Assembly: GCF_001194135.2 (NCBI RefSeq)
Contig: NC_069003.1
Location: 25,285,030-25,349,029 of the forward strand
DNA: 64,000 nt
Reading direction: 5' to 3'
Source: Octopus bimaculoides
Taxonomy: Eukaryota
Below, one piece after another: positions 7,061 to 63,855 of the stretch. A model generated the notes under the pieces. That model was not told where the DNA came from, searched no databases, and saw only the letters and a list, made by a program, of their open reading frames with translations. The position numbers and the translations under genes were made by a program. Position 1 is the stretch's first letter. The number at the start of each line of letters is the position of its first letter.

Positions 7061-7191
7061 ATGAAGTTTGCCATGTGGAAGAAATCCTCCATGTGGATTT
7101 TATTTGGAGGAATGGTGATGTTTTTCCTGTCATTAAGCACTTGTTTCGCCTATCTACTGGCCGGTGTCTACCACCGGTGGCAACTCGACAG
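7061..7191 (+). CDS. Coding exon 1 of a sulfotransferase-fold type II membrane protein (signal anchor)
   Basis: ATG at 7061 reads MKFAMWKKSSMWILFGGMVMFFLSLSTCFAYLLAGVYHRWQLD + AG, then GTAAGT donor at 7192. Basic N-terminus followed by a ~25-residue hydrophobic run. The phase-2 end matches the 1-nt overhang of the exon at 20318 (AG+G = Arg). Possible tandem CAGCAG acceptor upstream at 7046-7051. Confidence 0.8.
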
Positions 7192-10109
7192 GTAAGTTTC
7201 CAACTTGTGTACATTTACTTGTTTTCGGCTTCTTTGTGACTACCAGAACCTCAGTATGTTTTCTAATATATATATATATATATAAAGAATGGTGGCAGCT
7301 GATGAAGGAAACGTTCTCTATGTGGCCTGTGTGTTTTCTGTACTCTGTTTATCATTTTGTCCACGTTTTGTTTTGCATTGTCCTGTACCCAGATATGCAT
7401 CTATATATACAGGTAGATGTAAGTATGTATATATGCATATACTCATTTATTATTTATATATATGTATATATATATATATATGGCATAGCTGATTCAAGGA
7501 CTTTGAATTTTTTATGTTTTTCTCCTCCAATTAACAACTCAACACTAACATACTTTGCATTCAGTTTAATATGCAATCTTTCCTGTATAGGAAAACCTGC
7601 TGACATTCGTAAGTTTTTAATATATAGTCCTTTACTAAGGCGACGAGCTTACAGAATATGCTTAGTGGCATTTCGTCCGTCTTAAATTTCTGAGTTCAAA
7701 TTCCGCATTTTTTGCCTTTCATCCTTTCGGGGTCGATAAAATAAGTACCTGTTGTACACTGGAGTCGATGTAGTCGTCTTATCCCTTCCCAAAATCTCCT
7801 GCCTTATGCCAAAATTTGAAACCTATATATAGTCATTTACCGTTACAGAACACGAGCAAACTTAAAAGGTGGCACAGAGATTTCATACCGTTAAAATATA
7901 TATATATTAATTTTTCTGGTTTTAATTGCTGGACTATGGCCCTGCTCGGTCATACTACCATCGAGGTTTCCCTCCCAGTTGACCCTAGCTCTCTCGGATC
8001 GACCTCGAAAAACCAAATTGACCTCGTCGTGAAGGGAGATAACCATTTTGCTTGATCTTATCTGACCCGGGACGAAACGATGTAAAAAGACAAATACATT
8101 CCAAGATAGATATGGGCAAAATGCTGAAATGCACACGCACACACATGCTGTTTTGCCTCAGATCAATCTTTATGTATAGACAGTCCACCCGTAACTAACC
8201 TGTTGTTTCAATGGAACATTAGATAAGCTTCAACTGTCGGCTACCTTACCCAATGTCTCATTTTTTTTTTTTGACGGTGCTAGGCTATTTCTAATTGACC
8301 GAACGATCTCGACGCACACACATCGACTGACTTCAGCTCTACATAATTCTTCACCATTTTTAACCATCGTCGTAAGTTTAGGACTTTTAGAGGTTATGTT
8401 TTATGGTATGATGCATTTCCTATCGCCAACTCTTTGCAAGTCGCTCTTTACAATGCAGTCTATGCAATTAGTTGACTTATTGCTTAAAGAGATAGTCATA
8501 GCTTGAATGCCTTAATGCTAAACAATCAAATGGTCAAAGCAAGTCTTAGAGCTGTCACTTGTCCCGAATATATTGCAGAGTGACATGATTTTTGTCCTTG
8601 GGTAGCAACTGTTATGTGCTTCAGTTGACAAGAATTATAATTAAAACGAAAGATAGCCCTTATTTGCTTACCCTTAGAAAGTGTGAAAAACGGCTTCAAA
8701 CTTTGCTTTTGTTACATTTATTCAAACCCCCAAACAATCCTCTCAGCACATGGCTATGATGCTCCCCCACTACTCCTGTTCATGATCAGAGATGCACATA
8801 TTGTCGGCCACTAAGGGACCTGCTCTAGTGGTTATGGTCAAGTAACTAACAAGCAAATCTGTGGTATTGAGCAGAATATTTGCTATAACAAGATTTCTGC
8901 TTCAGCAACTCAGCACTGAATCTGTCTGAAATGTAATGGAAAATAGGTCAGTTTTAAAATATTGATGTCCAGGTGACAAAAGCAAAGTTTGAAGGGAATA
9001 GTAGTCATTTCCTTTAATTTCTAGACAGAAGTAAATAGGAATTTTACACTTACTAACCAAAGACAAAAAAAGATTTAATTTTCTTTTGATGTTATTTAAC
9101 TGTTGAATTCCTATGTTTCGAGTCATATCGAAGGAATGCCTGAATGAATCTGTTTGCATAATTAAGTAGTGGCTATATTCATTTCCCCCCCATTTTAAGA
9201 GATTAGTTTAAATACTTTAACACAAGGATTTTAATACAATGCATTTATTGTCCGTGCCAGTATAAGAATTACTCAGTCTAATAAACCAAGCATCTAACAT
9301 TAGTTTTTAACCTGTTTGGAAATGGATCCACCTCAGCCAACCTGAGAACTTTTATCAGCTTGAAAGAGTGGTGCAGATTCCCTATATATAATTGTCTAGT
9401 TTGCTTTATAGAGTATAGCTGTTCTGAAACTTAGTTGCTGTTCAAATTAACAAACGATCATTAGTATAACATTATTCAATGTCTTCCTTTTCTTAAACTA
9501 TTTCAAGTCTTTGAAGGAAACTTGGTTGCTATTTCTGATTGTTCCAGCTACTATGTAGGTTGAATAATGGTAGTTTCTAAGTGCACTAGATTTTGTTTTC
9601 ATGTTCCACAAAAAGCTAGTTCAATTGGTAGATGGTAGAGTCCATATGGCTATAAGCCACACTGAGGTACTAAAAGACCCAGACACCATTCTACAATTAC
9701 ATCTCTTCATGAGTAAATGGGGGTGCTTCTACCAGCTTAGAAAAAAAATAATGGAGCTCCTTAACTCTTTAGCATTTCTACTGGCTATATCCAACCCAAA
9801 TATTCTTCCTGTTTTATATCCAAATTAGCCAGATCTGGCTTCTTATACCTATCCTAGAATGCCATTCCTAAACTAAAGAGATCTCATCATTGAAATCTCA
9901 AAGCTACAAAAGAACACATGTAATTCAAAATAATGTAGATATATAAGCATTCTATTTGATAGGGTCATCTGACTGCTAAAGGGTTAAATAAACCTATATA
10001 AATTCTAAGGAGAAGGTTATTGTAGCTAGAAAACCTCTGATCATAGATCTGATCAGTAGTTAAACAAATTTGAGCCAATTTAGAGTCAAACCTCCTTCAA
10101 ACTACATCA

Positions 10110-10900
10110 GCTGCAACAAGATGAATTTAAGCATGTCACACCGAGGATAATAGAAGTCTCCAGAATATAACATCTGATACGGTCTTTTGTTCAGCGTAGA
10201 AGTAAACAGGAAAGTCTTGGTTAGAGATGGGTGAAATGTGTCCAAAAATCTCCTCTTTGGTCTTGGGTTGATGCCATGAAATGTTTTGAACCTTCATGAG
10301 AGGCTTTGTGTATGTACCATCAAGGCAATCTTGAAACTCCTTCTTCATGGTCTGGGTGTTGACTTTCTAGAGAAGGTGGCTCTCTACTGTCATTAGGAGG
10401 GCCAGCTTTGTTGACTTTGAGTTACTTGATTGCCAGATGTTTTGAAGCTTGTTACAGGCACCCTAGGCTTGTCTCTTGCATGTCAGAAAGTCTTTCTTTC
10501 TGTCTCTTGCATTGAGACCTGAGGTACTTAAAGTTACTTATCTCCTTGAATTGTGTGCTGTTAGAACAATTTTGCAGCTGGCTTTCATCTTTACTGTTGG
10601 TCGTGTATTCCATATTCTTTGCATTGAGAGACAGACCAACTTTGACTGCAGCATTCTCAAGGGATATTAACTAGTTTTGTGCATCACACAGTTGATGAAA
10701 TATGAAGGGAAATATTATCAAGATAGACAAGGACATTGAGATACTGGATCTGCTAGCATCTTGATCTCTTCTGCTTATAATGGTGAGAGCTTTGGCTTAT
10801 ATGGGGGTCAGAACTTTGCCTGAGGATGTAGTCCTCAATTGTCACAAAGAGAAAAAGTAGCTGGGATGTCTCCTTGGAGGATACTGGCAGTCACAAATTC
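10110..10900 (-). mobile_element. RTE-clade LINE reverse transcriptase fossil (stops and frameshifts); probably extends to ~11850
   Basis: Minus-strand fragments SILQGDI, ENAAVKVGLSLNAK, NFKYL, KDFLTCKRQA*GACNKLQNIWQSS, LDGTYTKPLMKVQNISW resemble RT and C-terminal motifs of RTE LINEs. Confidence 0.8.
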
Positions 10901-11920
10901 TCTAAGTTGGATCATCATCATCATCATCATCCATTTTCCATGCTAGCATGGTTCAGATGGTTTGATCAGAGTTGGTAAGCAAGAGAGCTGCACCAGGTTC
11001 CGGTCTGATTTGGCTTGATTTCTATGGCTGGATGCCAACCACTTTGCAGAGTGTGTTGGGTGCTTTTTTTTATGTGACACTCTCACTTATGCTTACCATA
11101 TTTTACTGTTCTAAGAGGTGAAGGCATCATTGGAGAATGTAATTGATGTTTTCACCAAAGATTCTTTCCTATGTGCTTCCAAACATTTTCTATTGACTGA
11201 TATCAAATTAACTCCCTTACTTACTTTTTAAATCTTCAGCACCCTCTACAGGGAGACTTCATCGACTAATTGCATGAATAACATGTAATAACCTGCAAAA
11301 CTCTGACAACCAACAGCATCGACAAACTAACAAGAAATCTTCTTCATGGTCTCTCCAATAAGCTCCCTTTCCGGCACCACACAAAAAGCATTCTTGCTGG
11401 TTCCACACAAATGCACCCATGCAGGTGCCACATGCAAAATTCCCCAATGCACTTTGTAAAGTGTTTGGCTTTAAGAAGGGCATCCTACTGTAGAACTCAT
11501 GCCAAAACAGAATTGAAGCCTGGGCAGCTCTCTAATGGGTCAGCTCCTGTCAAACTGTCCAACCTATGCCAGCATAGAAAACAGACACTAAATGATGATG
11601 ATTACAGCAAAGGAAACATGAGCAAACACTTGATCAATGACAGTCCAGTCATGACCCTCTGGAAGTCATTAACTAACAGCGTCAATCTCACTGATCTCAG
11701 CTCAGTCTTTCTAGGATTGCAAAGGCCATGGTTACTACTCTCTTTGTTTGTCCAAACCTCTAGGTTTGGAGGAAGATACTCGTGGCAATGAATTTATAGA
11801 CAAATCCATAATTGATTGATATTCTGTAATTTTTCTCCACTTTGACTGATTTGGTGGAAATCTTCACCACCACTACAGCTGTGCAGTATTTATTCCTGTC
11901 GGTTCTAGATCCTTTTATAT

Positions 11921-12630
11921 CAGTGTTTCTCAGTAATTTTTTTTTTACCTGTGGACCCCTTTGATTCCTGTTTTATTCAGATGGACCCTCCTAGCCATTT
12001 GATGTTTTAAGCCGATGGACTGGCTCCTGTGCAGATGGCACGTAAAATACACCATTTCGAGCGTGGCCATCACCAGTACCGTCTGACTGGCCCTCGTGCC
12101 GGTGGCACATAAAAGCACCCACTACACTCTCGGAGTGGTTGGCATTAGGAAGGGCATCCAGCTGTAGAAACTCTGCCAAATCAGATTGGAGCCTGGTGTA
12201 GCCATCTGGTCCACCAGTCCTCAGTCAAATCGTCCAACCCATGCTAGGATGGAAAGCGGACGTTAAACGATGATGATGATGATGATAGTATTAGAAACTG
12301 TATAAAAAGAATTTACCCTTTAGCATTCAGACTACTTTTTCAAATATAATGCTTATTCAATTTTTTTTTTTTTATTAATTATGTATTATCTTGTACCTTA
12401 GAGATTTTGAAGATGTAATTGTTTATTTTTAGAATGACATTGTAGGGTAGGTATGAGATGCTGGATATGGCGAGTTTGAGCATAAAAGAGATAGACTATT
12501 TGGGCCAGATATGGTTAGTTTACGATATTTTGTGTATTGTAGAAGTATAACCAATTTATTGCACAAATTTTGCCACCAAAATCTTATGTGTACCTCCAAG
12601 GATCATATGGATCCTAGTTATGAACTACTG
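11921..12630. mobile_element. hAT-like MITE hosting two nested insertions
   Basis: Begins CAGTGTTTCTCA, ends TATGAACTACTG; related internal sequence (TGGACCC...TTGATTCCTGTT...CAGATGGACCC) also at ~61045-61125. No clear 8-bp TSD. Confidence 0.5.
12015..12286 (+). mobile_element. RTE-tail SINE/LINE 3' end (family C) with a (GAT)n tail
   Basis: GGTTGGCATTAGGAAGGGCATCCAGCTGTAGAAACTCTGCC...CGTTAAACGATGATGATGAT. Confidence 0.85.
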
Positions 12631-12912
12631 CTCTAAGTGGATGCAGCGCTTCTGAATGGATGGAAGAGAAGCCAAAAGTTTTGTGCAATGGTTAATACAT
12701 CCATCATGGGTACAGAAAATGCAGGTTGACATCCTTTGGATAGCCATTGACCTTTTCACCATTCAAGGGGTTTTTAACCTAAAATACTACTTATTATTTC
12801 TAGCTGTATCCACTTCAAAACTAACTCTTAAAAATGATTAATTTCACATTTTCTCAGAGCTTCTACATTTTACATGCAGACAGACTGTCTTTACATGCAA
12901 TATTATGCAAAA

Positions 12913-13149
12913 CTGTTGTGTCTGGGGTGAGTCATTTTTTTTATTGTGCCTTAAAAATTAACACACTCACCGTTACAACTTCCACTTATTTTTATTTTCC
13001 TAAAATTTTCGTTGCGTCTTGCAACCTTTTCGATAGTCTTGACACAACGAAAATTTTAGGAAAATAAAAATAATAAGTGGAAATTTTAACGGTGAGTGTG
13101 TTAATTTTTAAGGCACAATAAAAAAAATGACTCTCCCCAGACACAACAG
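12913..13149. mobile_element. Near-perfect 237-bp palindromic (fold-back) element
   Basis: CTGTTGTGTCTGGGG...CCCCAGACACAACAG, ~105-bp arms with a ~22-nt loop; the ORF track shows HFFYCALKINTLTV on both strands. Confidence 0.85.
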
Positions 13150-13269
13150 AATATGCTTCAACACACGAAATCACATAAAAAATCTTGCAAACCAAATCCA
13201 AAAACGAAATATTATACAAAACACTATTTGTTAAATGCACCGGTCTTGTGGGGCTAGACAGACCTGTTG

Positions 13270-13836
13270 NNNNNNNNNNNNNNNNNNNNNNNNNNNNNNN
13301 NNNNNNNNNNNNNNNNNNNNNNNNNNNNNNNNNNNNNNNNNNNNNNNNNNNNNNNNNNNNNNNNNNNNNNNNNNNNNNNNNNNNNNNNNNNNNNNNNNNN
13401 NNNNNNNNNNNNNNNNNNNNNNNNNNNNNNNNNNNNNNNNNNNNNNNNNNNNNNNNNNNNNNNNNNNNNNNNNNNNNNNNNNNNNNNNNNNNNNNNNNNN
13501 NNNNNNNNNNNNNNNNNNNNNNNNNNNNNNNNNNNNNNNNNNNNNNNNNNNNNNNNNNNNNNNNNNNNNNNNNNNNNNNNNNNNNNNNNNNNNNNNNNNN
13601 NNNNNNNNNNNNNNNNNNNNNNNNNNNNNNNNNNNNNNNNNNNNNNNNNNNNNNNNNNNNNNNNNNNNNNNNNNNNNNNNNNNNNNNNNNNNNNNNNNNN
13701 NNNNNNNNNNNNNNNNNNNNNNNNNNNNNNNNNNNNNNNNNNNNNNNNNNNNNNNNNNNNNNNNNNNNNNNNNNNNNNNNNNNNNNNNNNNNNNNNNNNN
13801 NNNNNNNNNNNNNNNNNNNNNNNNNNNNNNNNNNNN
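13270..13836. other. Assembly gap (other gaps: 17374-17502, 27075-27224, 28785-29188, 34356-34486, 35755-35764, 48874-49255, 52462-52534, 62857-63547)
   Basis: Runs of N. Confidence 0.99.
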
Positions 13837-13899
13837 TTTTTTTTTTTTTTTTTTTTTTTTCGTCTCCTCAACCCCATCTTACTAGTGATGTTGCTGTCG

Positions 13900-14700
13900 G
13901 TAACTATATAGTACGGTAGCGATGTTGATGGTGTTATTGTTGTTGTAGTAGTGTTGCTGTCAGTAATATAGTGGTGGTGGTGGTGGTGTCAGCCGAGACA
14001 GGGATACATTCCTCTATAATCAGTTCTATTTGGCAGAGGAGAGAGAGAGCTAAAAATGACATGCAGTGTCTGAAATGTTTGACACTAGCTCTATAATAGA
14101 TGTCAACACTGAATAGCTACCGGGGTGGTTTAGGGAGCTACGTAGAGCTGTGGTGGTGGTGGCGGCGATGTAGTGAAGCTATCAGCTTCCACTCCGACTT
14201 CCCTACCCCCGCTTCACTCTCTTTTTCAGTTTTTTTTTTGTCTTTTCGTCTTGTTTTTTTTTAAGTATTGCTGATAAACTTCCCGAGGGTGGAAGTGAGA
14301 GAGTGCTCTGTGTGAGAGTGTCAGTGCCAAAAACTTTTATTGTAGACATGCTACTTGCCAACCCTTCTCCCAACGTTTTTTTTTTTTTTGACGGGGGGAG
14401 GGGGGTTGCAATTTTTTTTTAAATTTTTTTGTGTACTCACCGCCTCCATCAACCTCCTTTATGTCATCGTGTCACTACCACTACCACGACTACTAAACTA
14501 CTGCGGTTTACGTCTGTCTTGCTTTCTCTCTCTCTCTCACTGCCTGCCATACTAAGCCTTGTTTGACAGGTCCTCGGTAAACAACCACATTCACATCTGG
14601 CATTCGCGAACCCCCCTCCCCCTCTTTCACCTCACTCTCGTAAATACACACTTAACTGTTGAAAAAATATTAATGTGGGTTATATAGGTTTACGTAAGCA
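13900..14700. promoter_or_regulatory. CpG-rich promoter-like island inside the sulfotransferase-like gene intron
   Basis: Unique sequence with roughly 20 CpG in ~600 bp (by eye), flanked by CpG-poor DNA; GGT/GTA triplet runs and a (CT)n tract; candidate donors on both strands. Confidence 0.35.
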
Positions 14701-14917
14701 TGCAACTATAAGAGATTTTAAAACTACACGTTTACACATTCTTTCTCTTTTTCTCTATCGCACCTGTACACACACACACACACACACACACACTCTCTCT
14801 CTTTCTCCCTCTCTCTCTCTCTCTCTCCCCCCCTCTCTCACACACACACACACAAATGCCCCTTAAACACAATAGTATTGTCTCTCCTAAATCCTTGTAA
14901 TCTACCCTCTTATTTTT

Positions 14918-15540
14918 ATCATTTACTTGTTTCAATCATTAGACTGCGGCCATGTTGGGGCGCCGCCTTGAAGAATTTTTAATCGAATGAATCGACCCCA
15001 TTCCTTTTCTTTTTTTTTTTTTTAGCCTGATACTTATTCTATTGGTCTCTTTGCCCAACTGCTAAGTTACGGATACGTAAACACAAACAAGTTGTGGTGA
15101 GGGACAAACTCACACACACACGGCAGGCTTCTCTCAGTTTCCGTCTACCAGAACCGCTCACAAGGCTTTGGTTGGCCCGAGGTTACAGTAAAAGACACTT
15201 ACCTAAGGTGCCATGCACAGGGACTGAACCCGGACTGTGTGGTTGCGAAGCAATCTTCTGACCACACAGCCACGCCTACGCCTCGGGCCGACAAAAGCCT
15301 TGTGTGTGGATTTGGTTGACGGAAACTGAAAGAAGCCCATCATTTTATGTGTGTATGTGTGTACATATATCTGTGTCTTTGTCCCTCATCACTGTTTGAC
15401 AACCAGTGTTGGTGTGTTTGCATCCCTGTATCAGCAGTTCGGCAAAAGAGACAAATAGAAATAAGTACTGAGGTTAATTCTTCGATGTGGTGCCCCAGCA
15501 TGGCTGCAATGTAATGACTGAAACTAGTAAAAGCTAAAAG
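14918..15540. mobile_element. Inverted dimer of family A SINEs (minus 14918-15287, plus 15288-15540)
   Basis: The minus copy ends ...CACAGCCACGCC and is directly followed by the plus-strand body TCGGGCCGACAAAAGCCTTG...GACTGAAACTAGTAAAAG. Confidence 0.8.
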
Positions 15541-15543
15541 ATT

Positions 15544-15574
<31 letters not shown>

Positions 15575-16003
15575 CAGTCTTGCTACATCTACACCCAACA
15601 CCAAATCTCTATCATATTTACCTCCCACCCAAAACCACTCTGCTGTATCTACTTTCCACTCACATCCATACACACATCCTACACAGTGTCTCTGTTACCT
15701 GTCAGCTTGTAGATGGAGAAGGAATTCCATCTGCATCTCGTACCATCTCCCAGCCTCAGCTGTAAATGAAATTGCCATCCTTCAGTACAACCACATTTTC
15801 TACTTTGGATGTTTTGTAAAACAAATCTTACACAAGTGAAATATGTTGAAAGGTAATACCAAAGTAAGATGCTATGAGCACATGAAAACAAACTTATTTT
15901 TTAGAGATAGGTTGGGTGACATTCGAGGAAAGTTTGACTGCTATTTCTAACCACTTTGAATACCAGCATCGTTTTAAGACATTGTACTCTTTTATGTGTA
16001 TAG

Positions 16004-16207
16004 CTCTTTTACTTGTTTCAGTCATTTGACTGCGACCATGCTGGAGCACTGCCTTTAGTCGAATCAAATCGACCCCAGGACTTATTTTTTGGAAGCCTAG
16101 TATTTATTCTATCGGTCTCTTTTACCGAACCGCTAAGTTACGGGGACGTAAACACCAGCATCGGTTGTCAAGCGATATTGGGGGGACAAATACAGACACA
16201 CACACAC

Positions 16208-16241
<34 letters not shown>

Positions 16242-16404
16242 GATGGGGCTTCTTTCAGTTTCCGTCTACCAAATCCACTCACAAGGCTTTGATTGGCCCG
16301 AGGCTATAGTAGAAGACACTTGCCAAACGGGCCACGCAGTGGGACTGAACCCAGAACCATGTGGTTGGTAAGCAAGCTACTTACCACACAGCCACTCCCA
16401 TGCC
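16004..16404 (-). mobile_element. SINE family A, full length
   Basis: Complete body with a central (TA)n. Confidence 0.9.
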
Positions 16405-17207
16405 TAGCTGCATTACTCTCGCGCATGCAAAAATGTGATCATATGTAATGTACATACACACTTAACACATGTACAATTATGTTAATAGTCTTCACACCTG
16501 CAAAACTGCAATTGCGCATAATCGCAATCAACACCTGCTTTTACGACTATTATGCTCTGAAAAGTGGTTGCCCGGGAGGGGGCGAGGTCTGTTTTTGTGT
16601 TGTTCTTTTTTAAACTGTTACGCATGGCTTTTGCAGACTCTGCTCTGCAAGGCTGTTGGGATGGCACACAGTTAACATTCTTGAACATTTGTTGCAAGGC
16701 GACAGCTGCAGGGAGGAATAACTAGTTGCAGCGCAGGGGAGAGGATGCCTGTGTAGGTGGTGAGAGGAAAGATGAGTGAGTGAAAGGTGCCTGGTTGTAT
16801 GTGGCACGAGACCAGCTGTAGCAGTTGGTAGTTGAGAAAGGAGATAACACACTGGAGGAAGGAGTCAAGTATGTTGGTAAACAACTTAATGCTAATTAGG
16901 CAAGCAGTCTTTATTTGGATATGGTCCAACGTTCCCTCTAATTCTTTTGTTTTGTGTGTGTGTGTGTGTGTGTAGAAATTTGCTTATGCTTGCTCTTTTA
17001 CTTGTTTCAGTCATTTGACTGCAGCCATGCTGGAGCACTGCCTTGGAGGGTTTTAGTCGAACAAATCAACCCCAGCATTTAATTTTTTAACCCTAGTATT
17101 TATTCTATCAATCTCTTTTACTGAACTGCTAGGTTATGGAGACATAAACACATCAACACCAGTTGTCAAGCAGTGATGGGGGAACACACATATACATAGA
17201 TATACAT

Positions 17208-17873
17208 ATCATCATCATCGTCGTTTAACGTCTGCTTTCCATGCTAGCATGGGTTGGACGATTTGACTGAGGACTGGTGAACCAGGAGGCGACACCAGGC
17301 TCCAATCTGATTTGGCAGAGTTTCTACAGCTGGATGCCCTTCCTAACGCCAACCACTCCGAGTGGTTATATATNNNNNNNNNNNNNNNNNNNNNNNNNNN
17401 NNNNNNNNNNNNNNNNNNNNNNNNNNNNNNNNNNNNNNNNNNNNNNNNNNNNNNNNNNNNNNNNNNNNNNNNNNNNNNNNNNNNNNNNNNNNNNNNNNNN
17501 NNTCATACCACACACACACACAAGCATGCTCGTGTAAAATGAATATACATATATCTATAGACACACGCACACACATATACATACATATTCGAGCGAGGTT
17601 GTTGCCAGTGCCGCTGGACTGGCTCCTGTGCAGGTGGCACGTCAAATACACCATTTCGAGCGTGGCCGTTGCCAGTACCGCCTGACTGGCCCTCGTGCCG
17701 GTGGCACGTAAAAGCACCCACTACACTCTCTGAGTGGTTGGCGTTAGGAAGGGCATCCAGCTGTAGAAACTCTGCCAAATCAGATTGGAGCCTGGTGTAG
17801 CCATCTGGTTTCACCAGTCCTCATTCAAATTGTCCAACCCATGCTAGCATGGAAAGAGGATGTTAAATGATGA
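17208..17873. mobile_element. Inverted pair of family C elements around an N-gap (minus 17208-17362, plus 17590-17873)
   Basis: (ATC)n-GTTTAACGTC...TGGATGCCCTTCCTAACGCC on the left; the reverse-complement sequence on the right. Confidence 0.8.
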
Positions 17874-17875
17874 CA

Positions 17876-17992
<117 letters not shown>

Positions 17993-18275
17993 ACAGACTT
18001 CTTTCAGTTTCCGTCAACCAAACCCAGTCACAAGGCAAGAAGACATTTGTCCAAGGTGCCACATAATGGAACTGAACCTAGAACCATGTGGTTGGGAAGC
18101 AAGCTTCTTACCAATGCGCGAATTTTATTTTGCATATCTAAAAGAATAATCACCTTCATTTAAAAAAATTCAATTTCACCTTTAAAATTATTTGTGCACG
18201 TTTTTTACTCCCATGCACTAGATGCAAAATGTGTGATGTCACCTAAGAAGTCTGTATGTGTGTATCTGTAATCTT

Positions 18276-18593
18276 GGCACGTGGCTTAGTGGTTAGAGCA
18301 TTTGGCTCACAATCGTAAGGTCGTGAGTTCAATCCCCGGCAATGTGTTGTGTCCTTGAGTGAGACACTTTATTTCATGTTGCTCCAGTTCACTCAGCTGG
18401 CAAAAATGAGTAGTACCTGTATTTCAAAGGGGCCAGTCTTGTTGCACCTTGTGTCACACTGAATCTTCCTGAGCACTACATTAAGGGTACACATATTTGC
18501 GGAATGCTCAGTCACTTGCACGTTAATTTCATGAGCAAGCTGTTCCGCTGATCGTATCAGCTGGGACCCTCACCGTCATAACCAATGTAGTGC
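18276..18593 (+). mobile_element. tRNA-derived SINE sharing the family D 3' half but with a different head and centre (relatives ~29760-29950 minus, ~51565-51720 plus)
   Basis: GGCACGTGGCTTAGTGGTTAGAGC...GAGTTCAATCCCC, then GTGTTGTGTCCTTGAG...ACACTTTATTTC, then TACCTGTATTTCAAAGGG...CACTTGCACGTTAATTTC as in family D. Confidence 0.75.
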
Positions 18594-18849
18594 TCCTACT
18601 ACATCTGTAGCCCAAGCTAAAGTATGCGATCTGTAGTTTATTGTGGGGTTTCAGTTCAGCTTTGTAGAGTATTTGGTAGCTAGTGTGGAGAGGGCCAAAG
18701 ACATTTTTGATCTGAAGAAGGTGGCTAGCTTATGGCTGTTGCCAGTAGTGATTGCCACTGATGGTGAGGCCCAGAATTTATAGTGATATTGAGGGTTCTA
18801 GTTTGTTGTTGTTCATGTTCAGTGGATGACTATGATGTATAGTGATATC

Positions 18850-19275
18850 TTGTGAAGGCCAGAAATTTGTAAGTGTAAAAAAAACCAACCTCTTCGACTG
18901 TGATAAACTTTTTACATGAATTGTTTGCAAGATTTGGCATCCCAGACAAGATAGTGTCTGACAATGGAATACAATTTGTGTCTACCGAATTTTAAAAGTT
19001 TTGTGAAATGTTCGTGGTAGAACATGTAACTACTGCACCATATCATTCCCAGATCTAATGGACAGGCAGAATGCTTTGTCGATACCTTCAAAAGAACCGT
19101 TAGAAAATCAAATAAGGAAGTCATGGATGAAGTAGCTCTACAACAATTTTTAAGAGTATACTGTGTGACACCAAATCTGAACACACCAGCAGATAGCTCA
19201 CCAGCAGAACTGATATTTGCAAGGAAAGTAAAATCAATCTTTGATAAATTGCTACCAGGCAAGAAAAGAAAAAGT
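18850..19275 (+). mobile_element. Gypsy/Ty3 LTR-retrotransposon integrase remnant
   Basis: LFARFGIPDKIVSDNGIQFVSTEF*, TTAPYH (frameshift) RSNGQAECFVDTFKR, SPAELIFARK: rve integrase core with an in-frame stop and a frameshift. Confidence 0.85.
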
Positions 19276-20317
19276 GCTAGGGAACTGCTAAGTGACGCGG
19301 GACATAATAAACACACTAGCATCGGTTGTCAAGCAATGCTAGCAGGGACAAACACATACACACACACACACACATACATATATACGACGGGCTTCTTTCA
19401 GTTTCCGTCTACCAAATTCCACTCATAAGGCTATAGTAGAAGACACTTGCTCAAGATGCCACGCAGTGGGACTGAACCCAGAACCATGTGGTTGGTAAGC
19501 AAGCTACTTACCACACAGCCACTCTTGCATTATGCAATTAATTTTTTTTTTTTTTTTTTGCTTTCCACAATGCAGCAGTGTAATCAAATCTTTCCATGGG
19601 TCTACCTTAAGTGGTATTTGAAAACATGCTAAAGAGAGAGTCGCGATGTTATTGCTCATCGTACTAGAAACAACAGCAAATCCCACCTCGAATTACCCTA
19701 ACATCTTTAGAAAGATTAAAAGAATGACATGTTGGATATTGTAGACAGGGATATACAATACTGGAAAAAGTACTGTGATGGTCATGGCTAGAAGGCCTTC
19801 GTTCATAGGTTTACTTGATCAGTACTGGTTTAATTCTACCACTAATCTTTCAGCTATGAAAGGAGTATGTCGAAGTAAGAAGAATTGTGCCCCTTAATTC
19901 AGAAGTACAACAGGACAGCTTTAGCAAGTTTTATGTAGCACCTTTACTGTAGAAGTAAGAGTAAAGCCCATCTTGTGTCTTTACTATACAAATGTCTTAA
20001 TTGTTGAAGCTGTATTAAATATAATGACTTGTTTGGAAGAAAGAAATTATTTTAAACCGGCCATATCCAGCCAGAATATTTTACAAGTTTTATGTTCAGA
20101 TCGGTCAGATCTGGTCTCTCACACCAACTCTACAATACCATTCTAAAAATTAGTGGTTACCTCATCAAAATCTCAAAGCTACAAGACAATGTATACCTCA
20201 TTCAAAACTATGTGAATAAAGAAGCTTTACTTTTGACAGAATAATATGAATGATAAAAGGTTAATAAAACAAATTTGAAGAACATTTTCTAAAACTTTTT
20301 ACTTTTTTTATTTTCAG

Positions 20318-21377
20318 GAAAGAATCGGTTGAATTACAAAACATAATGGTGTCTCTGGGCCGGCTGAAAGACAACTCCAATGTATATAAAGTCCTGCAAG
20401 AGGAACTAATGGAATCTACAGTTCAAAGAGTATTTCCATGGTTACCAAAGAACAACACTTTGCCAAACTATTTCTTTCACCAGCAAACCAGAAAGTCTCC
20501 AGCCAGTTACCAACACAGCAATATCGTCTTTATGACAAATACTCATGACAGTAGCAATTCATTCTCAGATTGTCTTCATGACATAGCCACTGACCACTCG
20601 TTGCCCATGTCTCCATTCATGTCCATTCGCAACCGGAGGGCATGGGAAGAGGCTGAGGGCAACGAGCGCATGCTCCATGACCGGATTAAGATCCACCATG
20701 GAAATTATGCCTTTGGCATGTGCGAGAATCTCACCAGTTCATGCTCGTATTTTTTAATGCTCCAAGATCCAATAGAGCGAGCCATCTCGACCTACCATTA
20801 CTGTAAGGATGCCATCAGAGATGAACTCTGCAGTGTAGTGAATGCCAACAAAGTTTCCGTCCATGATTGGGCAGTCCACCAAGGAAGTTTGTTCTTCCGT
20901 CAGTTATTGTTCAAACCTGACTTTTGCGACATAGAAGTGAATAGTTCTCTCATAGCAGTCCAAAATATTAACAAGCTCCCCTGTTGGTACAAGCAAAAGC
21001 TTTATTTTGATTCCTTATCGAATGCTGATGTTACAGAAGCTCTCAACTATGTTGGAAAGCATCTTGACCAGTGGTTTTCAGTTGTGGGTCACGTCGATGA
21101 CTACTCCGCCTCCGTCAAAATGTTTGAATATGTTTACCGGTTACCATTTTCTAAATGTTATGATTCCTCTCTGGCCTTCCAAGAAGAACCTAGCAATAAT
21201 AACAGGGCATACACAGTAGATCAAAATGAAGAAACTTTAGACAAGCAAGAAGTGTTCCTTCTAAAACAAAGTGTCACTGTTCAAAAAGCTTTACATGCCG
21301 ACTACAGAATTTATAATGAAGCCAAAAAGTTATACCAAATTCAAAGACAGGTTTTATTTAATCAAATAGGACATTAA
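20318..21377 (+). CDS. Coding exon 2: sulfotransferase-like lumenal domain (Sulfotransfer_2/HS2ST/Gal3ST-like), motifs degenerate
   Basis: Polypyrimidine tract + TTTCAG acceptor at 20317; open frame G-KESVELQNI-MVSLG... to TAA at 21375-21377. Contains YFLMLQDPIERAISTYHY (3'-PB-like), FSVVGHVDDY and DYRIYNEAKKLY (typical C-terminal sulfotransferase motifs), 8 Cys, and NNT/NLT/NSS sequons. Confidence 0.85.
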
Positions 21378-22040: not shown

Positions 22041-22432
22041 CTCTTTACTCTTTTACTCTTTTACTTGTTTCAGTCATTTGACTGTGGCCATGCTGGAGCA
22101 CCGCCTTTAGTCGAGCAAATCGACCCCAGTACTTATTCTTTGTAAGTCTACTACTTATTCTATCAGTCTGTTTTGCCGAACTGCTAAGTTACAGGGACGT
22201 AAACACACCAGCATCGGTTGTCAAGCGATGGTGGGGCGACAAACACAGACACACAAACACACATACATATATACGACGGGCTTCTTTCAGTTTCCGTCTA
22301 CCAAATCCACTCACAAGGCTTTGGTCGGCCCGAGGCTATAGTAGAAGACACTTGCCAAAGGTGCCACGCAGTGGGACTGAACCCGGAACCATGTGGTTGG
22401 TAAGCAAGCTACTTACAACACAGCCACTCCTG
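22041..22432 (-). mobile_element. SINE family A, full length
   Basis: (CTCTTTTA)n tail and complete body. Confidence 0.9.
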
Positions 22433-26744: not shown

Positions 26745-27572
26745 TCTTTACTCTTTTACTTGTTTCAGTCCTTTGGCTGCAGCCGTGCTGGAGCACCGCC
26801 TTTAGTCGAGAAAATCGACCCCGGGACTTATTCTTTGTAAGCCTAGTACTTATTCTATCGGTCTCTTTTTGCCGAACCGCTAAGTTACGGGGACGTAAAC
26901 ACACCAGCATCAGTTGTCAAGCGATGGTGGGGCGACAATAACACATACATATATATATATGGTAATCATCAAGTTTAGGGGAATAAAAAAAAATTTAAAA
27001 AAATATTCAAGGGAAGTAACTGAACGTCTTACCAGTATTCTCCGTACATCTCTGTTTATAAATAAATCACACACNNNNNNNNNNNNNNNNNNNNNNNNNN
27101 NNNNNNNNNNNNNNNNNNNNNNNNNNNNNNNNNNNNNNNNNNNNNNNNNNNNNNNNNNNNNNNNNNNNNNNNNNNNNNNNNNNNNNNNNNNNNNNNNNNN
27201 NNNNNNNNNNNNNNTATATATAAATATATATATAGGATCTTTCTGATTTGACGGGCAACACTTGTTTTCTTAACGAAACACTTTCAAACTTGGGATACTG
27301 GTAGAATGTATCATATAAAACATCTTTTTCTCTTAGCTTTCTTAACAAAAATTTATATATTGCAAGTTATTTCATGTTAAAGTTGTATTTCTGTAATTTC
27401 AACCAATCACTGTCGTCTATATATATATATATATACACACACACATATACGACAGGCTTCTTTCAGTTTCTGTCTACCAAATCCACTCACAAGGCTTTGG
27501 TCGGCCCGAGGCTATAGTAGAAGACACTTGCCCAAGGTGCCACGCAGTGGGACTGAACCCGGAACCATGTGG
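26745..27572 (-). mobile_element. SINE family A split by an N-gap and a TIR element
   Basis: Tail half at 26745-26945 and head half at ~27440-27572 flank the gap and 27235-27419. Confidence 0.65.
27235..27419. mobile_element. GGATC-ended TIR element, left arm only, inside a (TA)n tract of a SINE
   Basis: GGATCTTTCTGATTTGACGGGCAACACTTG...CAACCAATCACTG matches the left arm of 28452-29524. Confidence 0.75.
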
Positions 27573-28451: not shown

Positions 28452-29524
28452 GGATCTTTGTGATTTGACGGGCAACACTTGTTTTCTTAACGAAACACTT
28501 TCAAACTTGGGACACTGGTAGAATGTGTCATACAAAACAACTTTTTCTCTTAGCCTTCTTAACAAAAAATTATACATCGCAAGTTATTTCATGTTAAAGT
28601 TGTCGTATTTCTGTAATTTCAACCAATCACTGACGTCTATTCAGCTGAATACAGTCAGTGCTTGCCGGTCATAAAAATGTTATTCCCTGTGACATTTCAT
28701 CCGGTTTAATCGTAATTTATACGCATATATTGTTTATATAATAAATTACGCTGTGCGTATCTGTGTGTATATTTTTCCCATAACNNNNNNNNNNNNNNNN
28801 NNNNNNNNNNNNNNNNNNNNNNNNNNNNNNNNNNNNNNNNNNNNNNNNNNNNNNNNNNNNNNNNNNNNNNNNNNNNNNNNNNNNNNNNNNNNNNNNNNNN
28901 NNNNNNNNNNNNNNNNNNNNNNNNNNNNNNNNNNNNNNNNNNNNNNNNNNNNNNNNNNNNNNNNNNNNNNNNNNNNNNNNNNNNNNNNNNNNNNNNNNNN
29001 NNNNNNNNNNNNNNNNNNNNNNNNNNNNNNNNNNNNNNNNNNNNNNNNNNNNNNNNNNNNNNNNNNNNNNNNNNNNNNNNNNNNNNNNNNNNNNNNNNNN
29101 NNNNNNNNNNNNNNNNNNNNNNNNNNNNNNNNNNNNNNNNNNNNNNNNNNNNNNNNNNNNNNNNNNNNNNNNNNNNNNNNNNNNNNNNGTCAGAACTAAC
29201 GGGGATTAATACCATATACACCGTCACAGCACTGACTGTATTCAACTGAATAGACGTCAGTGATTAGTTGAAATTATCGAAATAAGACAACTTTTAACGT
29301 GAAATAACTTCGAATACAAAATTTATTATCTGTTCTATACCACAAAATATACAAGTATACGAAGTTTGAAAGTGTTTCGGTACCAAAAACACTACATAAA
29401 AAAATGTTGACCGTCAAATCACAAAGGTCCAAAATATGTTTTATATGACACATTCTACCAGTATCCCAAGTTTGAAAATGTTTCGTTAAGAAAACAAGTG
29501 TTGCCCGTCAATTCAGAAAGATCC
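28452..29524. mobile_element. GGATC-ended TIR element (subfamily 1), middle lies in an N-gap
   Basis: ~60-bp TIR: GGATCTTTGTGATTTGACGGGCAACACTTGTTTTCTTAACGAAAC vs GTTTCGTTAAGAAAACAAGTGTTGCCCGTCAATTCAGAAAGATCC. Confidence 0.8.
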
Positions 29525-34355: not shown

Positions 34356-34486
34356 NNNNNNNNNNNNNNNNNNNNNNNNNNNNNNNNNNNNNNNNNNNNN
34401 NNNNNNNNNNNNNNNNNNNNNNNNNNNNNNNNNNNNNNNNNNNNNNNNNNNNNNNNNNNNNNNNNNNNNNNNNNNNNNNNNNNNNN

Positions 34487-34840
34487 TTTCAGTCTTTTGA
34501 CTGTGGCCATGCTGGAGCACCGCCTTTTTTTAGTCGAGCAAATCGACCCCAGGACTTATTCTTTAGAAGCCTAGTACTTATTCTATCGATCTCTTTTGCC
34601 GAACCGCTAAGTTACGGGGACATAAACACATCAGCATCGGTTGTCAAGCGATGTTGGAGGGACAAACACACACATACAAACATACACACATACATATATA
34701 TATATATACATATATACGACGGGCTTCTTTCAGTTTCCGTCTACCAAATCCACTCACAAGGCTTTGGTCGGCCCGAGGCTATAGTAGAAGACACTTGCCC
34801 AAGATGCCGCGCAGTGGGACTGAACCCGGGACCATGTGGT
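34487..34840 (-). mobile_element. SINE family A
   Basis: Body starts right after the N-gap; head truncated. Confidence 0.85.

Positions 34841-36251: not shown

Positions 36252-63855
<27,604 letters not shown>

What the first reader, a model, noticed from the sequence alone, without database searches (positions are those of the whole stretch)
20318..21377. Intact sulfotransferase-fold protein that has lost its PAPS-binding and catalytic residues (candidate pseudo-enzyme)
Seen: an uninterrupted ORF with sulfotransferase scaffold motifs, 8 Cys and 3 sequons. Established: Golgi sulfotransferases of the HS2ST/Gal3ST/CHST type use a 5'-PSB loop like FLHIPKTGGTS, a catalytic His in YHGH, and LRDPxxRxxS (3'-PB). 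By my manual alignment these read FMTNTHDSSNS (Lys to His at 20544, acidic Asp in the phosphate loop), HHGN (His to Asn) and LQDPIERAIS (Arg to Gln at 20763). Inference: three key positions are changed while the frame stays open, suggesting a protein kept for a non-catalytic job (glycan binding, scaffold or regulator of active sulfotransferases) or one using a different donor.
Basis: partly seen in the sequence, partly recalled or inferred. Interest (0 to 1): 0.72.

Follow-up and report, generated by a model that had tools for sequence, protein, structure and literature searches.

The report
Cephalopod sulfotransferase-fold protein lacking PAPS site
This octopus gene encodes a membrane-anchored protein with the shape of a sugar-sulfating enzyme that has lost the residues that hold the sulfate donor, yet cephalopods have kept it intact under strong selection, so it is a credible "dead enzyme" with an unknown new job.

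Summary
Window 20318-21377 (+) is the last coding exon of a two-exon gene; exon 1 is 7061-7191. The 396-aa type II membrane protein is identical to Octopus bimaculoides "uncharacterized protein LOC106876511".

The protein itself has no Pfam hit. Its family has about 1,380 representatives in molluscs, nemerteans, brachiopods, hemichordates and echinoderms. That family links to Sulfotransfer_2 (78 of 110 members), and its profile hits HS2ST and HS6ST. A confident model (pLDDT 91) finds HS2ST as best structural match.

- **Donor-site losses:** in 105 non-cephalopod relatives the 5'-PSB Lys/Arg is 92% conserved and the 3'-PB Arg 93%. All 21 cephalopod sequences, octopods and decapodiforms, carry His and Gln/Glu there. 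They also lose H73, T146 and K83, and the octopods lose G79.
the His-to-Asn change in HHGN is not a loss, because the family never has His at that position.
- **Selection:** dN/dS is 0.10 in two independent species pairs, and all eight Cys are kept. The 5'-PSB loop alone has become variable within cephalopods.
- **Expression:** the cuttlefish orthologue is a spliced mRNA.

Best reading is a conserved coleoid pseudo-sulfotransferase (about 0.65). No assay has tested loss of activity, and the non-catalytic role is unknown. Similar motif loss recurs in scallop and Lingula.

The parts
7061..7191 (+). Coding part of exon 1. It encodes residues 1-43 plus the first two bases of codon R44, giving a short basic cytoplasmic tail (MKFAMWKK) and a hydrophobic signal-anchor of about 25 residues. 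The donor is AG|gtaagt at 7192.
   Evidence: tblastn of O. sinensis, Argonauta and Sepia orthologues. Sequence and translation. The spliced product is identical to XP_014780574.1. The topology call is inference from sequence.
7192..20317 (+). A phase-2 intron of 13.1 kb between the anchor/stem and the sulfotransferase-like domain. It contains two N gaps and SINE-like repeat copies.
   Evidence: The same two-coding-exon structure, with a phase-2 intron at the equivalent place (within one codon), is found in O. sinensis, Argonauta, Solemya and Haliotis.
20318..21377 (+). Terminal coding exon, covering residues 44-396 and the TAA stop. It encodes a long stem helix and then the whole sulfotransferase-fold lumenal domain.
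   Evidence: AlphaFold2 model with pLDDT 91.3 and pTM 0.88. Foldseek best hits are HS2ST 4NDZ/3F5F and HS6ST 5T03.
20520..20570 (+). Degenerate 5'-phosphosulfate-binding (5'-PSB) strand-loop-helix: NIVFMTNTHDSSNSFSD, exon-2 residues 68-84. Relatives read vVFlHhpK/RaaGTTxK.
   Evidence: Model secondary structure is strand 68-72 and helix 77-92. Column statistics: H73 is 88% and becomes T; K/R76 is 92% and becomes H; G79 is 90% and becomes S; K/R83 is 72% and becomes S. An acidic D77 is inserted. Only 2 of 12 positions are invariant among cephalopods, against 0.54 for the domain.
20544..20546 (+). Codon CAT = His76 (full-length His120), at the position of the catalytic or phosphosulfate-contacting Lys/Arg (HS2ST K83).
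   Evidence: The Solemya orthologue has CGT (Arg) here. All 21 cephalopod sequences have His.
20694..20705 (+). HHGN (residues 126-129), which aligns with HS2ST Y-H140-G-H142. H126 and G128 are conserved in the lophotrochozoan branch. Position 129 is variable across the family, so Asn here is not a loss.
   Evidence: HMM alignment to 4NDZ/3F5F. Column statistics. NJ tree with motifs.
20742..20795 (+). 3'-phosphate-binding (3'-PB) strand-helix: CSYFLMLQDPIERAISTY, residues 142-159. The first Arg is lost (Q149) and T146 becomes L. P151, R154 and S157 are kept.
   Evidence: Model secondary structure is strand 142-148 and helix 151-164. R149 is 93% in relatives, with Q or E in all cephalopods. The segment is otherwise 18/22 invariant among cephalopods.
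20763..20765 (+). Codon CAA = Gln149 (full-length Gln193), at the position of the 3'-phosphate-binding Arg (HS2ST R164).
   Evidence: Solemya has CGA and Haliotis CGG.
20451..20459 (+). N-glycosylation sequon NNT (N45), inside the near-invariant family motif PWLPKNNTLPNYF.
20727..20735 (+). Sequon NLT (N137).
20940..20948 (+). Sequon NSS (N208).

Best explanation
The gene encodes a type II membrane protein of the secretory pathway. Its lumenal domain has the HS2ST-like (Pfam Sulfotransfer_2-related) sulfotransferase fold. It belongs to an uncharacterised family of marine invertebrates whose typical members carry canonical PAPS-binding motifs.

Before octopods and decapodiforms split, the cephalopod lineage lost the side chains that hold the donor. 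These are the 5'-PSB Arg (now His, followed by an acidic residue), the His and Gly/Thr of the same loop, a nearby Lys, and the 3'-PB Arg (now Gln/Glu). The protein therefore most likely can no longer bind PAPS or transfer sulfate.

The rest of the domain stays under strong purifying selection, including four putative disulfides and the remaining conserved surface. So the protein is kept for a non-catalytic role. The most plausible roles are binding the former acceptor (a glycan or other lumenal ligand), or partnering with and scaffolding another Golgi enzyme.

- **Shown:** gene structure, family membership by homology and fold, motif loss, its age, selection, and transcription in cuttlefish.
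- **Inferred:** membrane topology and Golgi location, that intact-motif relatives are active enzymes, loss of PAPS binding, and the non-catalytic role.
For: **Homology and fold**
- 78 of 110 family members hit Pfam Sulfotransfer_2, with best E=3.6e-8.
- The family profile hits HS6ST3 5T03 (E=2.6e-5) and HS2ST 4NDZ (E=3.7e-5), with both motifs aligned.
- The AF2 model has pLDDT 91.3. Its best PDB matches are HS2ST at E=7.9e-6, probability 1.00, TM 0.43/0.51, and then HS6ST.

**Motif loss is specific**
- Of 71 columns conserved in 105 non-cephalopod relatives, cephalopods keep 64, including all Cys.
- They change 7 in at least four of five sequences. Three of these (H73, K/R76, R149) lie inside the PAPS motifs, and T146 lies just upstream of the 3'-PB Arg. 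Fisher p=0.027, or 0.004 if G79 is counted.
- Basic residues K83 and R/K140 are also gone, and an acidic residue sits next to His76.
- The motifs are functionally coupled in this family. 89 of 105 relatives have both intact and 7 have lost both (Fisher p=4.8e-6, not corrected for phylogeny).

**Release of constraint**
- The 5'-PSB loop is 2/12 invariant among four cephalopod lineages, against 0.54 for the domain. In other taxa it is one of the better conserved segments.

**Not a pseudogene**
- dN/dS is 0.10 for O. bimaculoides versus O. sinensis (dS 0.20), and 0.10 for Sepia versus a second decapodiform (dS 0.80).
- The reading frame is intact in every cephalopod sequence seen: 19 full-length or ORF-complete, one 367-aa genome gene model and one 273-aa fragment.
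- Identity to the Solemya orthologue (38-41%) is about the same as for Haliotis (41-43%).

**Expression**
- Sepia esculenta RNA-seq assemblies carry the CDS contiguous across the exon junction, in more than 100 contigs.

**Literature**
- Arg can replace Lys in the 5'-PSB of active enzymes: R79 is listed among the catalytic residues of TPST1 in PMC5562738, and its placement in the 5'-PSB loop rests on my own knowledge.
Against: - No biochemical data exist for any member of this family, so 'intact relatives are active' and 'cephalopod form is inactive' both rest on motifs.
- His76 is invariant in all cephalopods while its neighbours drift. This suggests it has a function of its own. A protonated His in the acidic Golgi could in principle still contact an anion.
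- S157, R154 and P151 of the 3'-PB, and the whole 3'-PB helix, remain conserved.
- The family's catalytic base is not identified, so I cannot say whether it is retained.
- No octopus expression data were obtainable here; the only extra octopus contig was genomic.
- No intact paralogue that the protein could regulate was found in cephalopods, but the searches used were not sensitive enough to exclude one.
Confidence: 0.65

Rival explanations
1. It is still a PAPS-dependent sulfotransferase with an atypical donor site. His76 (protonated in the Golgi lumen), backbone amides of the loop, S157/R154 and other residues would bind PAPS well enough for catalysis.
For: - His76 is invariant in 21 cephalopod sequences while the surrounding loop varies.
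- The 3'-PB Ser, the second Arg and the helix are kept.
- The 5'-PSB loop binds largely through backbone amides in known structures (own knowledge).
- Overall constraint is as strong as expected for an enzyme, with omega 0.10.
Against: - Several donor-contacting side chains are lost together: H73, K/R76, G79, T80/81, K83, T146 and R149.
- An Asp/Glu follows His76 in four of five lineages.
- The loop sequence drifts freely among cephalopods.
- In the same family, loss of one motif goes with loss of the other, as expected once donor binding is abandoned.
Confidence: 0.15
2. The domain has been repurposed as an enzyme or binding protein for a different small ligand or donor. The remodelled Ser/Thr/Asn/Asp/His-rich loop (TNTHDSSNS) would form a new site, for example for a metal, a sugar or a non-nucleotide donor.
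For: - There are cephalopod-specific, invariant new His residues at 76, 160 and 258, and new acidic residues at 77 and 204.
- Purifying selection is strong.
Against: - The loop is not conserved between octopods and decapodiforms (TNTHDSSNS versus VNPHESGMS). That argues against a precisely shaped new site.
- I know of no precedent for PAPS-independent chemistry in this fold (own knowledge).
Confidence: 0.1
3. Catalytic competence is restored after transcription. Coleoid A-to-I RNA editing would recode His76 (CAU to CIU = Arg) and Gln149 (CAA to CIA = Arg), and possibly Ser78/79 (AGU/AGC to Gly). The genome would then encode a dead enzyme and edited mRNAs a live one.
For: - Both lost Arg codons are exactly one G-to-A step from the Solemya codons (CGT and CGA), and both are of the type that editing converts back to Arg.
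- Sepia transcripts exist in two forms that differ only by two A-to-G changes 14 nt apart. One recodes H217R, and both lie 19-33 nt downstream of the Gln codon. This is compatible with an editing cluster in this very segment.
Against: - None of 21 cephalopod sequences shows Arg at either site, including consensus transcripts from more than 100 Sepia contigs.
- The second decapodiform has GAA (Glu) at 149, which editing cannot turn into Arg.
- H73, T146 and K83 are not restorable by editing.
- The His76 codon's third base and neighbouring codons differ synonymously between octopus species, so nothing suggests a conserved RNA structure here.
- RNA folding of the region is no more stable than shuffles, with z = -0.04 and +0.81.
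- G-to-A transitions are the commonest route from Arg anyway.
Confidence: 0.05
4. It is a decaying pseudogene whose frame happens still to be open.
For: Catalytic motifs are degenerate, and the protein has no Pfam hit.
Against: - omega is 0.10 in two independent pairs.
- The frame is intact in octopods and decapodiforms, whose split is roughly a quarter of a billion years old (own knowledge for the date).
- 64 of 71 conserved columns and all Cys are kept.
- The gene is spliced and expressed in Sepia.
Confidence: 0.02

Closest known systems
Heparan sulfate 2-O-sulfotransferase (HS2ST; PDB 3F5F, 4NDZ), Pfam Sulfotransfer_2 (PF03567)
   Same: It is the best structural match, at Foldseek E=7.9e-6 and probability 1.0. 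The family profile aligns over the 5'-PSB, the YHGH strand and the 3'-PB. Both have a type II membrane layout and the same strand-loop-helix donor motifs.
   Different: - Identity is only 15-16% and TM is 0.43-0.51.
- The octopus protein scores nothing against PF03567.
- HS2ST K83, R164 and H142 correspond to His, Gln and Asn.
- The family has eight conserved Cys and an N-terminal PWLPKNNTLPNYF motif that HS2ST lacks.
Heparan sulfate 6-O-sulfotransferase (HS6ST3; PDB 5T03)
   Same: It is the top sequence-profile hit (E=2.6e-5). 'VIVFLHIQKTGGTT' and 'ITMLRDPVSRYLS' align to the family consensus. Foldseek probability is 0.97.
   Different: TM is lower (0.38). The same donor residues are missing in the octopus protein.
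The unnamed marine-invertebrate family itself, for example Solemya velum ScPMuIL_007733, Haliotis rubra LOC124257414, Saccoglossus LOC102801845, Tubulanus LOC141909849 and Apostichopus/Holothuria proteins
   Same: Identity is 38-45% over the full length in mollusc orthologues. They share the two-exon structure with a phase-2 intron, the same Cys pattern and the same N-terminal motif.
   Different: These carry FLHHP-R/K-AAGT and RDPxERxxS. 89 of 105 have both motifs intact. All are annotated 'uncharacterized', and none has been assayed.
Secretory-pathway pseudoenzymes that act on or with paralogous enzymes, for example FAM20A activating FAM20C and Cosmc chaperoning T-synthase (own knowledge), and pseudoenzymes in general (PMC5106787)
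   Same: The enzyme fold is retained under selection, cofactor or catalytic residues are lost, and the location is lumenal.
   Different: No partner enzyme is known here. No intact paralogue of the same family was detected in cephalopods. The analogy is functional only and is untested.
Tyrosylprotein sulfotransferases TPST1/2
   Same: They use Arg rather than Lys in the 5'-PSB: PMC5562738 lists R79/R78 among the catalytic residues, and their placement in the 5'-PSB rests on my own knowledge. This supports the view that the Arg-type lophotrochozoan relatives are active.
   Different: They are a different sulfotransferase family, with no detectable sequence match to this protein.

Membership tests
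Pfam Sulfotransfer_2 (PF03567) / HS2ST-HS6ST-like Golgi sulfotransferases | Scores at or above the Pfam gathering threshold (22 bits) | tested here: not met
   The window protein has no hit even at E<=10, and the same is true of the Argonauta and Sepia orthologues. The nearest non-cephalopod relatives score 15-20 bits, below threshold. 78 of 110 family members hit at E<=0.01, with best 3.6e-8.
Pfam Sulfotransfer_2 (PF03567) / HS2ST-HS6ST-like Golgi sulfotransferases | Sulfotransferase alpha/beta fold superposable on a solved member | tested here: met
   AF2 model pLDDT is 91.3. Foldseek gives 4NDZ_A at E=7.9e-6, probability 1.00 and TM 0.43/0.51, then 3F5F, then 5T03 at probability 0.97. I could not inspect the coordinates residue by residue.
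Pfam Sulfotransfer_2 (PF03567) / HS2ST-HS6ST-like Golgi sulfotransferases | 5'-PSB loop with Lys (or Arg) and the G-T/S-T/S turn | tested here: not met
   The sequence reads T-N-T-H-D-S-S-N-S where relatives read H-x-P-K/R-A/S-G/A-G-T-T.
Pfam Sulfotransfer_2 (PF03567) / HS2ST-HS6ST-like Golgi sulfotransferases | 3'-PB motif R-D-P-x-x-R-x-x-S | tested here: not met
   The sequence is Q-D-P-I-E-R-A-I-S. The first Arg (93% in relatives; HS2ST R164) is lost. Pro, the second Arg and Ser are kept.
Pfam Sulfotransfer_2 (PF03567) / HS2ST-HS6ST-like Golgi sulfotransferases | Catalytic base (His142 in HS2ST) | tested here: inconclusive
   The aligned residue is Asn129, but the column is G/D/E/P in intact-looking relatives. 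The family uses a different, unidentified base. H142 as the HS2ST base comes from PMC6094399.
Pfam Sulfotransfer_2 (PF03567) / HS2ST-HS6ST-like Golgi sulfotransferases | PAPS-dependent sulfotransfer activity | not testable with these tools
   This needs recombinant protein and 35S-PAPS or PAP-binding assays.
Pfam Sulfotransfer_2 (PF03567) / HS2ST-HS6ST-like Golgi sulfotransferases | Type II membrane topology with a lumenal, disulfide-bonded, N-glycosylated domain | tested here: inconclusive
   A basic N-terminus plus a hydrophobic stretch of about 25 residues is encoded by exon 1. Eight family-conserved Cys and three sequons are present. No topology predictor was available, so this is read from the sequence.
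Pseudoenzyme (catalytically dead homologue retained by selection) | Homologous to, and shares the fold of, an enzyme family | tested here: met
Pseudoenzyme (catalytically dead homologue retained by selection) | Lacks residues essential for cofactor binding or catalysis that are conserved in relatives | tested here: met
   H73, K/R76, G79, K83, T146 and R149 are lost, against 72-93% conservation in 105 relatives.
Pseudoenzyme (catalytically dead homologue retained by selection) | Maintained by purifying selection and expressed | tested here: met
   omega is 0.10 in two pairs. The state is shared by octopods and decapodiforms. Spliced mRNA is present in Sepia esculenta larval RNA-seq. Octopus expression was not verified here.
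Pseudoenzyme (catalytically dead homologue retained by selection) | Demonstrated absence of catalytic activity | not testable with these tools
   This needs a biochemical assay.

The most novel reading that the evidence does not exclude
The genome encodes a donor-site-dead sulfotransferase whose two lost arginines (His CAU and Gln CAA) are rewritten to Arg by coleoid A-to-I mRNA editing. Sulfotransferase activity would then be switched on only in edited transcripts, tissues or conditions. That would be an enzyme whose catalytic competence is gated by RNA recoding.
Probability: 0.05. Interest if true: 0.85.

Novelty: new variant of a known kind. Interest (0 to 1): 0.45.

Why it matters
Golgi-type carbohydrate sulfotransferases are not a class in which conserved pseudoenzymes have been described. 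Two full-text searches found none, and no paper mentions this gene.

Here an uncharacterised, marine-invertebrate-wide branch of the HS2ST-like fold yields a clean natural experiment:
- Intact-motif orthologues exist in bivalves and gastropods.
- A donor-site-dead but strongly constrained orthologue exists in all coleoid cephalopods.
- Apparently independent dead copies exist in a scallop and a brachiopod.

This gives a tractable system for asking what a sulfotransferase scaffold does without PAPS, such as glycan reader, chaperone or regulator. It also gives an assayable entry point into a family with about 1,400 representatives and no known function.

If the finding is only what it seems, it is a modest annotation gain: 'uncharacterized protein' becomes 'Sulfotransfer_2-like pseudoenzyme'.

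Tried and rejected
- **Pfam and PDB sequence searches with the octopus protein alone, or with the 8-sequence alignment.** These found nothing relevant. Only the 110-sequence profile reached HS2ST/HS6ST.
- **First structure prediction with 8 sequences.** It was unusable, at pLDDT 43.8, and was replaced by the 110-sequence run.
- **Word-indexed protein search with the family alignment and with the Solemya orthologue.** It returned only 12-13 proteins and missed members of its own query alignment. It therefore cannot exclude an intact cephalopod paralogue or tell the Nautilus state.
- **RNA-editing restoration.** I checked codons, transcript variants and RNA folding. There is no positive evidence at the two key sites, so it is kept only as a low-probability reading.
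- **Decaying pseudogene.** Rejected on dN/dS and deep conservation.
- **dS beyond the two close pairs.** It is saturated, so no omega could be given for the coleoid stem.
- **Octopus expression evidence.** The one extra octopus contig (L016) is genomic or unspliced.
- **tRNA, Rfam and tandem-repeat scans of the window.** They added nothing relevant to the gene.
- **NJ tree.** It has no support values and was used only for coarse grouping.
Full report
**What is at the coordinates**

The window contains an uninterrupted reading frame at 20346..21377 (+), 343 codons from the first ATG. It is the only long ORF in 64 kb that is not made of assembly-gap Ns.

tblastn with orthologues found the missing N-terminus at 7061-7191, ending in AG|gtaagt. 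Splicing 7061-7191 to 20318-21377 gives a 396-aa protein. It is 100% identical to Octopus bimaculoides XP_014780574.1, 'uncharacterized protein LOC106876511'. It differs at 21-22 residues from the O. sinensis and O. vulgaris proteins.

So the window is O. bimaculoides, and the gene is already modelled but unnamed. No paper in the library mentions it. Exon 1 encodes a short basic tail and a hydrophobic stretch of about 25 residues, read here as a type II signal anchor (inference from sequence).

**Is it a sulfotransferase fold?**

This cannot be shown from the protein alone. Pfam finds nothing even at E<=10, and PDB sequence searches find nothing.

The word-indexed protein search gave only seven relatives. 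They are O. sinensis, Argonauta, two transcript-derived cephalopod sequences, the bivalve Solemya velum and two unnamed sequences. The three non-cephalopods score just under the Sulfotransfer_2 threshold. The best is 20.2 bits against a cut-off of 22, and it aligns over profile positions 11-232 of 252.

An exhaustive profile search then showed a large family: 1,380 cluster representatives at E<=1e-3 and 115 at E<=1e-30. Named members come from these groups, and all are 'uncharacterized':
- molluscs (Solemya, Haliotis, Argopecten);
- nemerteans (Tubulanus, Lineus);
- a brachiopod (Lingula);
- hemichordates (Saccoglossus, Ptychodera, Glandiceps);
- echinoderms (Holothuria, Apostichopus).

Three lines of evidence connect the family to known sulfotransferases:
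- Of 110 aligned members, 78 hit Sulfotransfer_2 (best E=3.6e-8) and 8 hit Gal-3-O_sulfotr.
- The 110-sequence profile hits HS6ST3 (5T03, E=2.6e-5) and HS2ST (4NDZ/3F5F, E=3.7e-5). Both donor motifs are aligned.
- With that alignment AlphaFold2 gives a confident model, pLDDT 91.3 and pTM 0.88. The 8-sequence attempt had failed at pLDDT 43.8.

Foldseek against the PDB ranks HS2ST first (4NDZ_A, E=7.9e-6, probability 1.00, TM 0.43/0.51). HS6ST follows at probability 0.97, and cytosolic SULTs and P-loop kinases come far behind.

The model has strand 68-72, loop, helix 77-92, and strand 142-148, turn, helix 151-164. These are the strand-loop-helix and strand-helix elements that carry the 5'-PSB and 3'-PB motifs in all sulfotransferases (PMC5562738). 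The fold claim is therefore supported, but only through relatives and the predicted structure.

**Are the key residues really lost?**

I used exon-2 numbering (add 44 for full length) and compared five cephalopod sequences with 105 non-cephalopod representatives.

| Position | Role or HS2ST equivalent | 105 non-cephalopods | Cephalopods |
|---|---|---|---|
| 73 | 5'-PSB loop | His 88% | Thr/Ser/Val |
| 76 | HS2ST K83 | Lys 70% + Arg 22% | His in all |
| 77 | 5'-PSB loop | Ala/Ser | Asp/Glu/Gln |
| 79 | 5'-PSB loop | Gly 90% | Ser in octopods, Gly in decapodiforms |
| 80-81 | 5'-PSB loop | mostly Thr/Ser | Asn/Ser/Ala/Met at 80; Ser or Gln at 81 (Ser kept in four of five) |
| 83 | near 5'-PSB | Lys/Arg 72% | Ser/Thr/Met |
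| 146 | 3'-PB strand | Thr 74% | Leu |
| 149 | HS2ST R164 | Arg 93% | Gln, or Glu in one decapodiform |
| 151, 154, 157 | 3'-PB (157 = HS2ST S172) | Pro, Arg, Ser conserved | retained |

A wider check shows His at 76 in the 20 sequences that cover that site, and Gln/Glu at 149 in all 21. These 21 sequences comprise four Octopus, Argonauta, 13 in the Sepia cluster and 3 in a second decapodiform cluster.

The survey was made unbiased by listing every column conserved in the 105 relatives. There are 71 such columns. Cephalopods keep 64, including all the Cys, and change 7. These are 73, 76, 146, 149, 241, 258 and 318. The changes are enriched in the predefined donor motifs, at Fisher p=0.027, or 0.004 if G79 is counted.

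**The third claimed loss does not hold**

The HMM alignment confirms that HHGN lines up with HS2ST Y-H140-G-H142. His142 is the putative HS2ST base (PMC6094399). In this family, however, the 129 column is Gly/Asp/Glu/Pro in intact-looking members and is never a conserved His.

The Asn is therefore not a cephalopod loss, and the family's catalytic base is unknown. H126 is conserved in the lophotrochozoan branch (motif IHRG) and is kept in cephalopods. D/E136 is 82% conserved and is kept as Glu.

The immediate ancestors also used Arg, not Lys, in the 5'-PSB (FLHHPRAAGT in Solemya and allies). That is compatible with activity, since TPST1/2 use R79/R78 among their catalytic residues (PMC5562738).

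**Is it kept by selection?**

Nei-Gojobori estimates on exon 2 give the following:

| Pair | dN | dS | omega |
|---|---|---|---|
| O. bimaculoides vs O. sinensis | 0.020 | 0.201 | 0.10 |
| Sepia sequence vs second decapodiform | 0.082 | 0.80 | 0.10 |

Deeper pairs are saturated at synonymous sites.

Identity of the Solemya protein to cephalopods (38-41%) is about the same as to Haliotis (41-43%). There is thus no wholesale acceleration.

All four genomic loci examined share the same two-coding-exon structure. These are O. sinensis, Argonauta, Solemya and Haliotis. Each has a phase-2 intron at the equivalent place, within one codon, which supports orthology.

The constraint has shifted in an informative way. 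Among four cephalopod lineages the 5'-PSB loop (73-84) is invariant at only 2 of 12 positions, Asn74 and His76. The domain overall is 0.54 invariant, and the 3'-PB strand-helix is 18/22. In non-cephalopods the same loop is one of the better conserved segments. A donor loop that drifts while the rest stays fixed is what loss of donor binding predicts.

**Expression**

P0003 is carried by contigs assembled from runs SRR20545812 and SRR31864755. These are Sepia esculenta larval RNA-seq (PMC10466719, PMC11917092). In those contigs the exon-1 and exon-2 coding parts are contiguous, so they are spliced mRNA. The cluster is seen in more than 100 contigs.

The only extra octopus contig I could fetch is genomic or unspliced. 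Octopus expression is therefore not shown here.

**The same thing happens elsewhere in the family**

Of the 105 non-cephalopod representatives, 89 have both motifs, 2 lack only the 3'-PB Arg/Ser, 7 lack only the 5'-PSB features, and 7 lack both. The association gives Fisher p=4.8e-6, not corrected for phylogeny.

The double-loss members include Argopecten irradians XP_069106196.1 and Lingula anatina XP_013400337.1. Motif loss with scaffold retention therefore seems recurrent in this family. The NJ tree places these away from the cephalopods, but it carries no support values.

**Most likely explanation**

This is a coleoid-wide pseudo-sulfotransferase. It is a lumenal HS2ST-like domain that has most likely lost PAPS binding and sulfotransfer, and it is retained for a non-catalytic function. 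I put this at about 0.65.

By analogy with other secretory-pathway pseudoenzymes (own knowledge, for example FAM20A and Cosmc; general review PMC5106787), the role would be one of two things. It could bind the former acceptor, a glycan or other lumenal ligand. Or it could partner with or scaffold another Golgi enzyme. Nothing here discriminates between these.

**Rivals**

- **An atypical but active enzyme (0.15).** The invariance of His76 is the best argument for it.
- **A repurposed ligand site (0.10).**
- **Restoration by A-to-I editing (0.05).**
- **A decaying pseudogene (0.02).** This is effectively refuted.

The editing idea arose because both lost Arg codons are exactly the editable kind. 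His is CAT against Solemya CGT, and Gln is CAA against Solemya CGA.

Sepia transcripts also occur in two forms that differ only by two A-to-G changes 14 nt apart, inside the 3'-PB helix. One is silent and the other is H217R. The two forms appear in 34 and 70 contigs.

Several observations count against the idea:
- No transcript consensus shows Arg at either key site.
- One decapodiform has GAA at 149, which editing cannot turn into Arg.
- Several other losses are not editable.
- Local RNA folding is unremarkable, at z = -0.04 and +0.81.

**Verdict**

The finding is a new variant of a known kind: a pseudoenzyme inside the Golgi sulfotransferase fold, in an uncharacterised invertebrate family. 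It is of moderate interest. It is useful for annotation and as an experimental entry point, but not a surprise in principle, since pseudoenzymes occur in most enzyme families.

Noticed in passing
L003-L006 versus L010-L015 (Sepia esculenta transcript contigs), CDS nt 636 and 650; equivalent to window residues A155 and H160 (about 20783-20798): Two transcript forms of the cuttlefish orthologue differ only by two A-to-G changes 14 nt apart. One is GCA to GCG (silent) and the other is CAT to CGT (H217R). The H form is in 34 contigs and the R form in 70. This could be an A-to-I editing cluster inside the 3'-PB helix or a two-SNP haplotype. His160 is itself a cephalopod-specific residue.
   Followed up: partly
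P0018 (Argopecten irradians XP_069106196.1), P0022 (Lingula anatina XP_013400337.1), and P0023, P0030, P0040, P0068 (unnamed): Other members of the same family have independently degenerate 5'-PSB and 3'-PB motifs while keeping the Cys scaffold. Pseudoenzyme formation may therefore be recurrent in this family.
   Followed up: partly
window 16004-16398, 19282-19559, 22056-22431, 26751-26960, 34487-34840, 49256-49611, 50288-50684: A SINE-like interspersed repeat of about 390 bp occurs in many copies at 78-92% identity. Copies lie in the gene's intron and immediately 3' of it. Translated, it gives the recurring 'LFYLFQSFDCGHAGAPP' pseudo-ORF.
   Followed up: partly
window 43795-44183 / 47387-47774 / 60619-61004; 12011-12287 / 17585-17884 / 38119-38424 / 54679-54988; 2488-2722 / 45688-45925 / 53969-54193 / 55968-56172: At least three further interspersed repeat families are present at about 88-93% identity. 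The second family contains a 67-bp internal tandem duplication (17588-17713 and 54688-54814).
   Followed up: no
window 13270-13836, 17374-17502, 27075-27214, 28785-29188, 34356-34486, 35755-35764, 48874-49255, 52462-52534, 62857-63547: Nine assembly gaps (runs of N) show this is draft scaffold sequence. Two of them lie in the 13-kb intron of the gene, so intron content is incomplete. The apparent long 'ORFs' across them are artefacts.
   Followed up: yes
whole window: There is no other convincing protein-coding ORF, no tRNA and no Rfam family in 64 kb. The gene sits alone in repeat-rich, AT-rich (about 36% GC) sequence.
   Followed up: partly
P0002 (Argonauta hians), residues about 300-350: The Argonauta orthologue carries an Asn-rich low-complexity insertion of about 30 residues (NNNNNNNNYNNLNNNNDYNSNDNNNNN). 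It sits in the loop that is disordered in the octopus model (pLDDT below 50 at 298-303).
   Followed up: no
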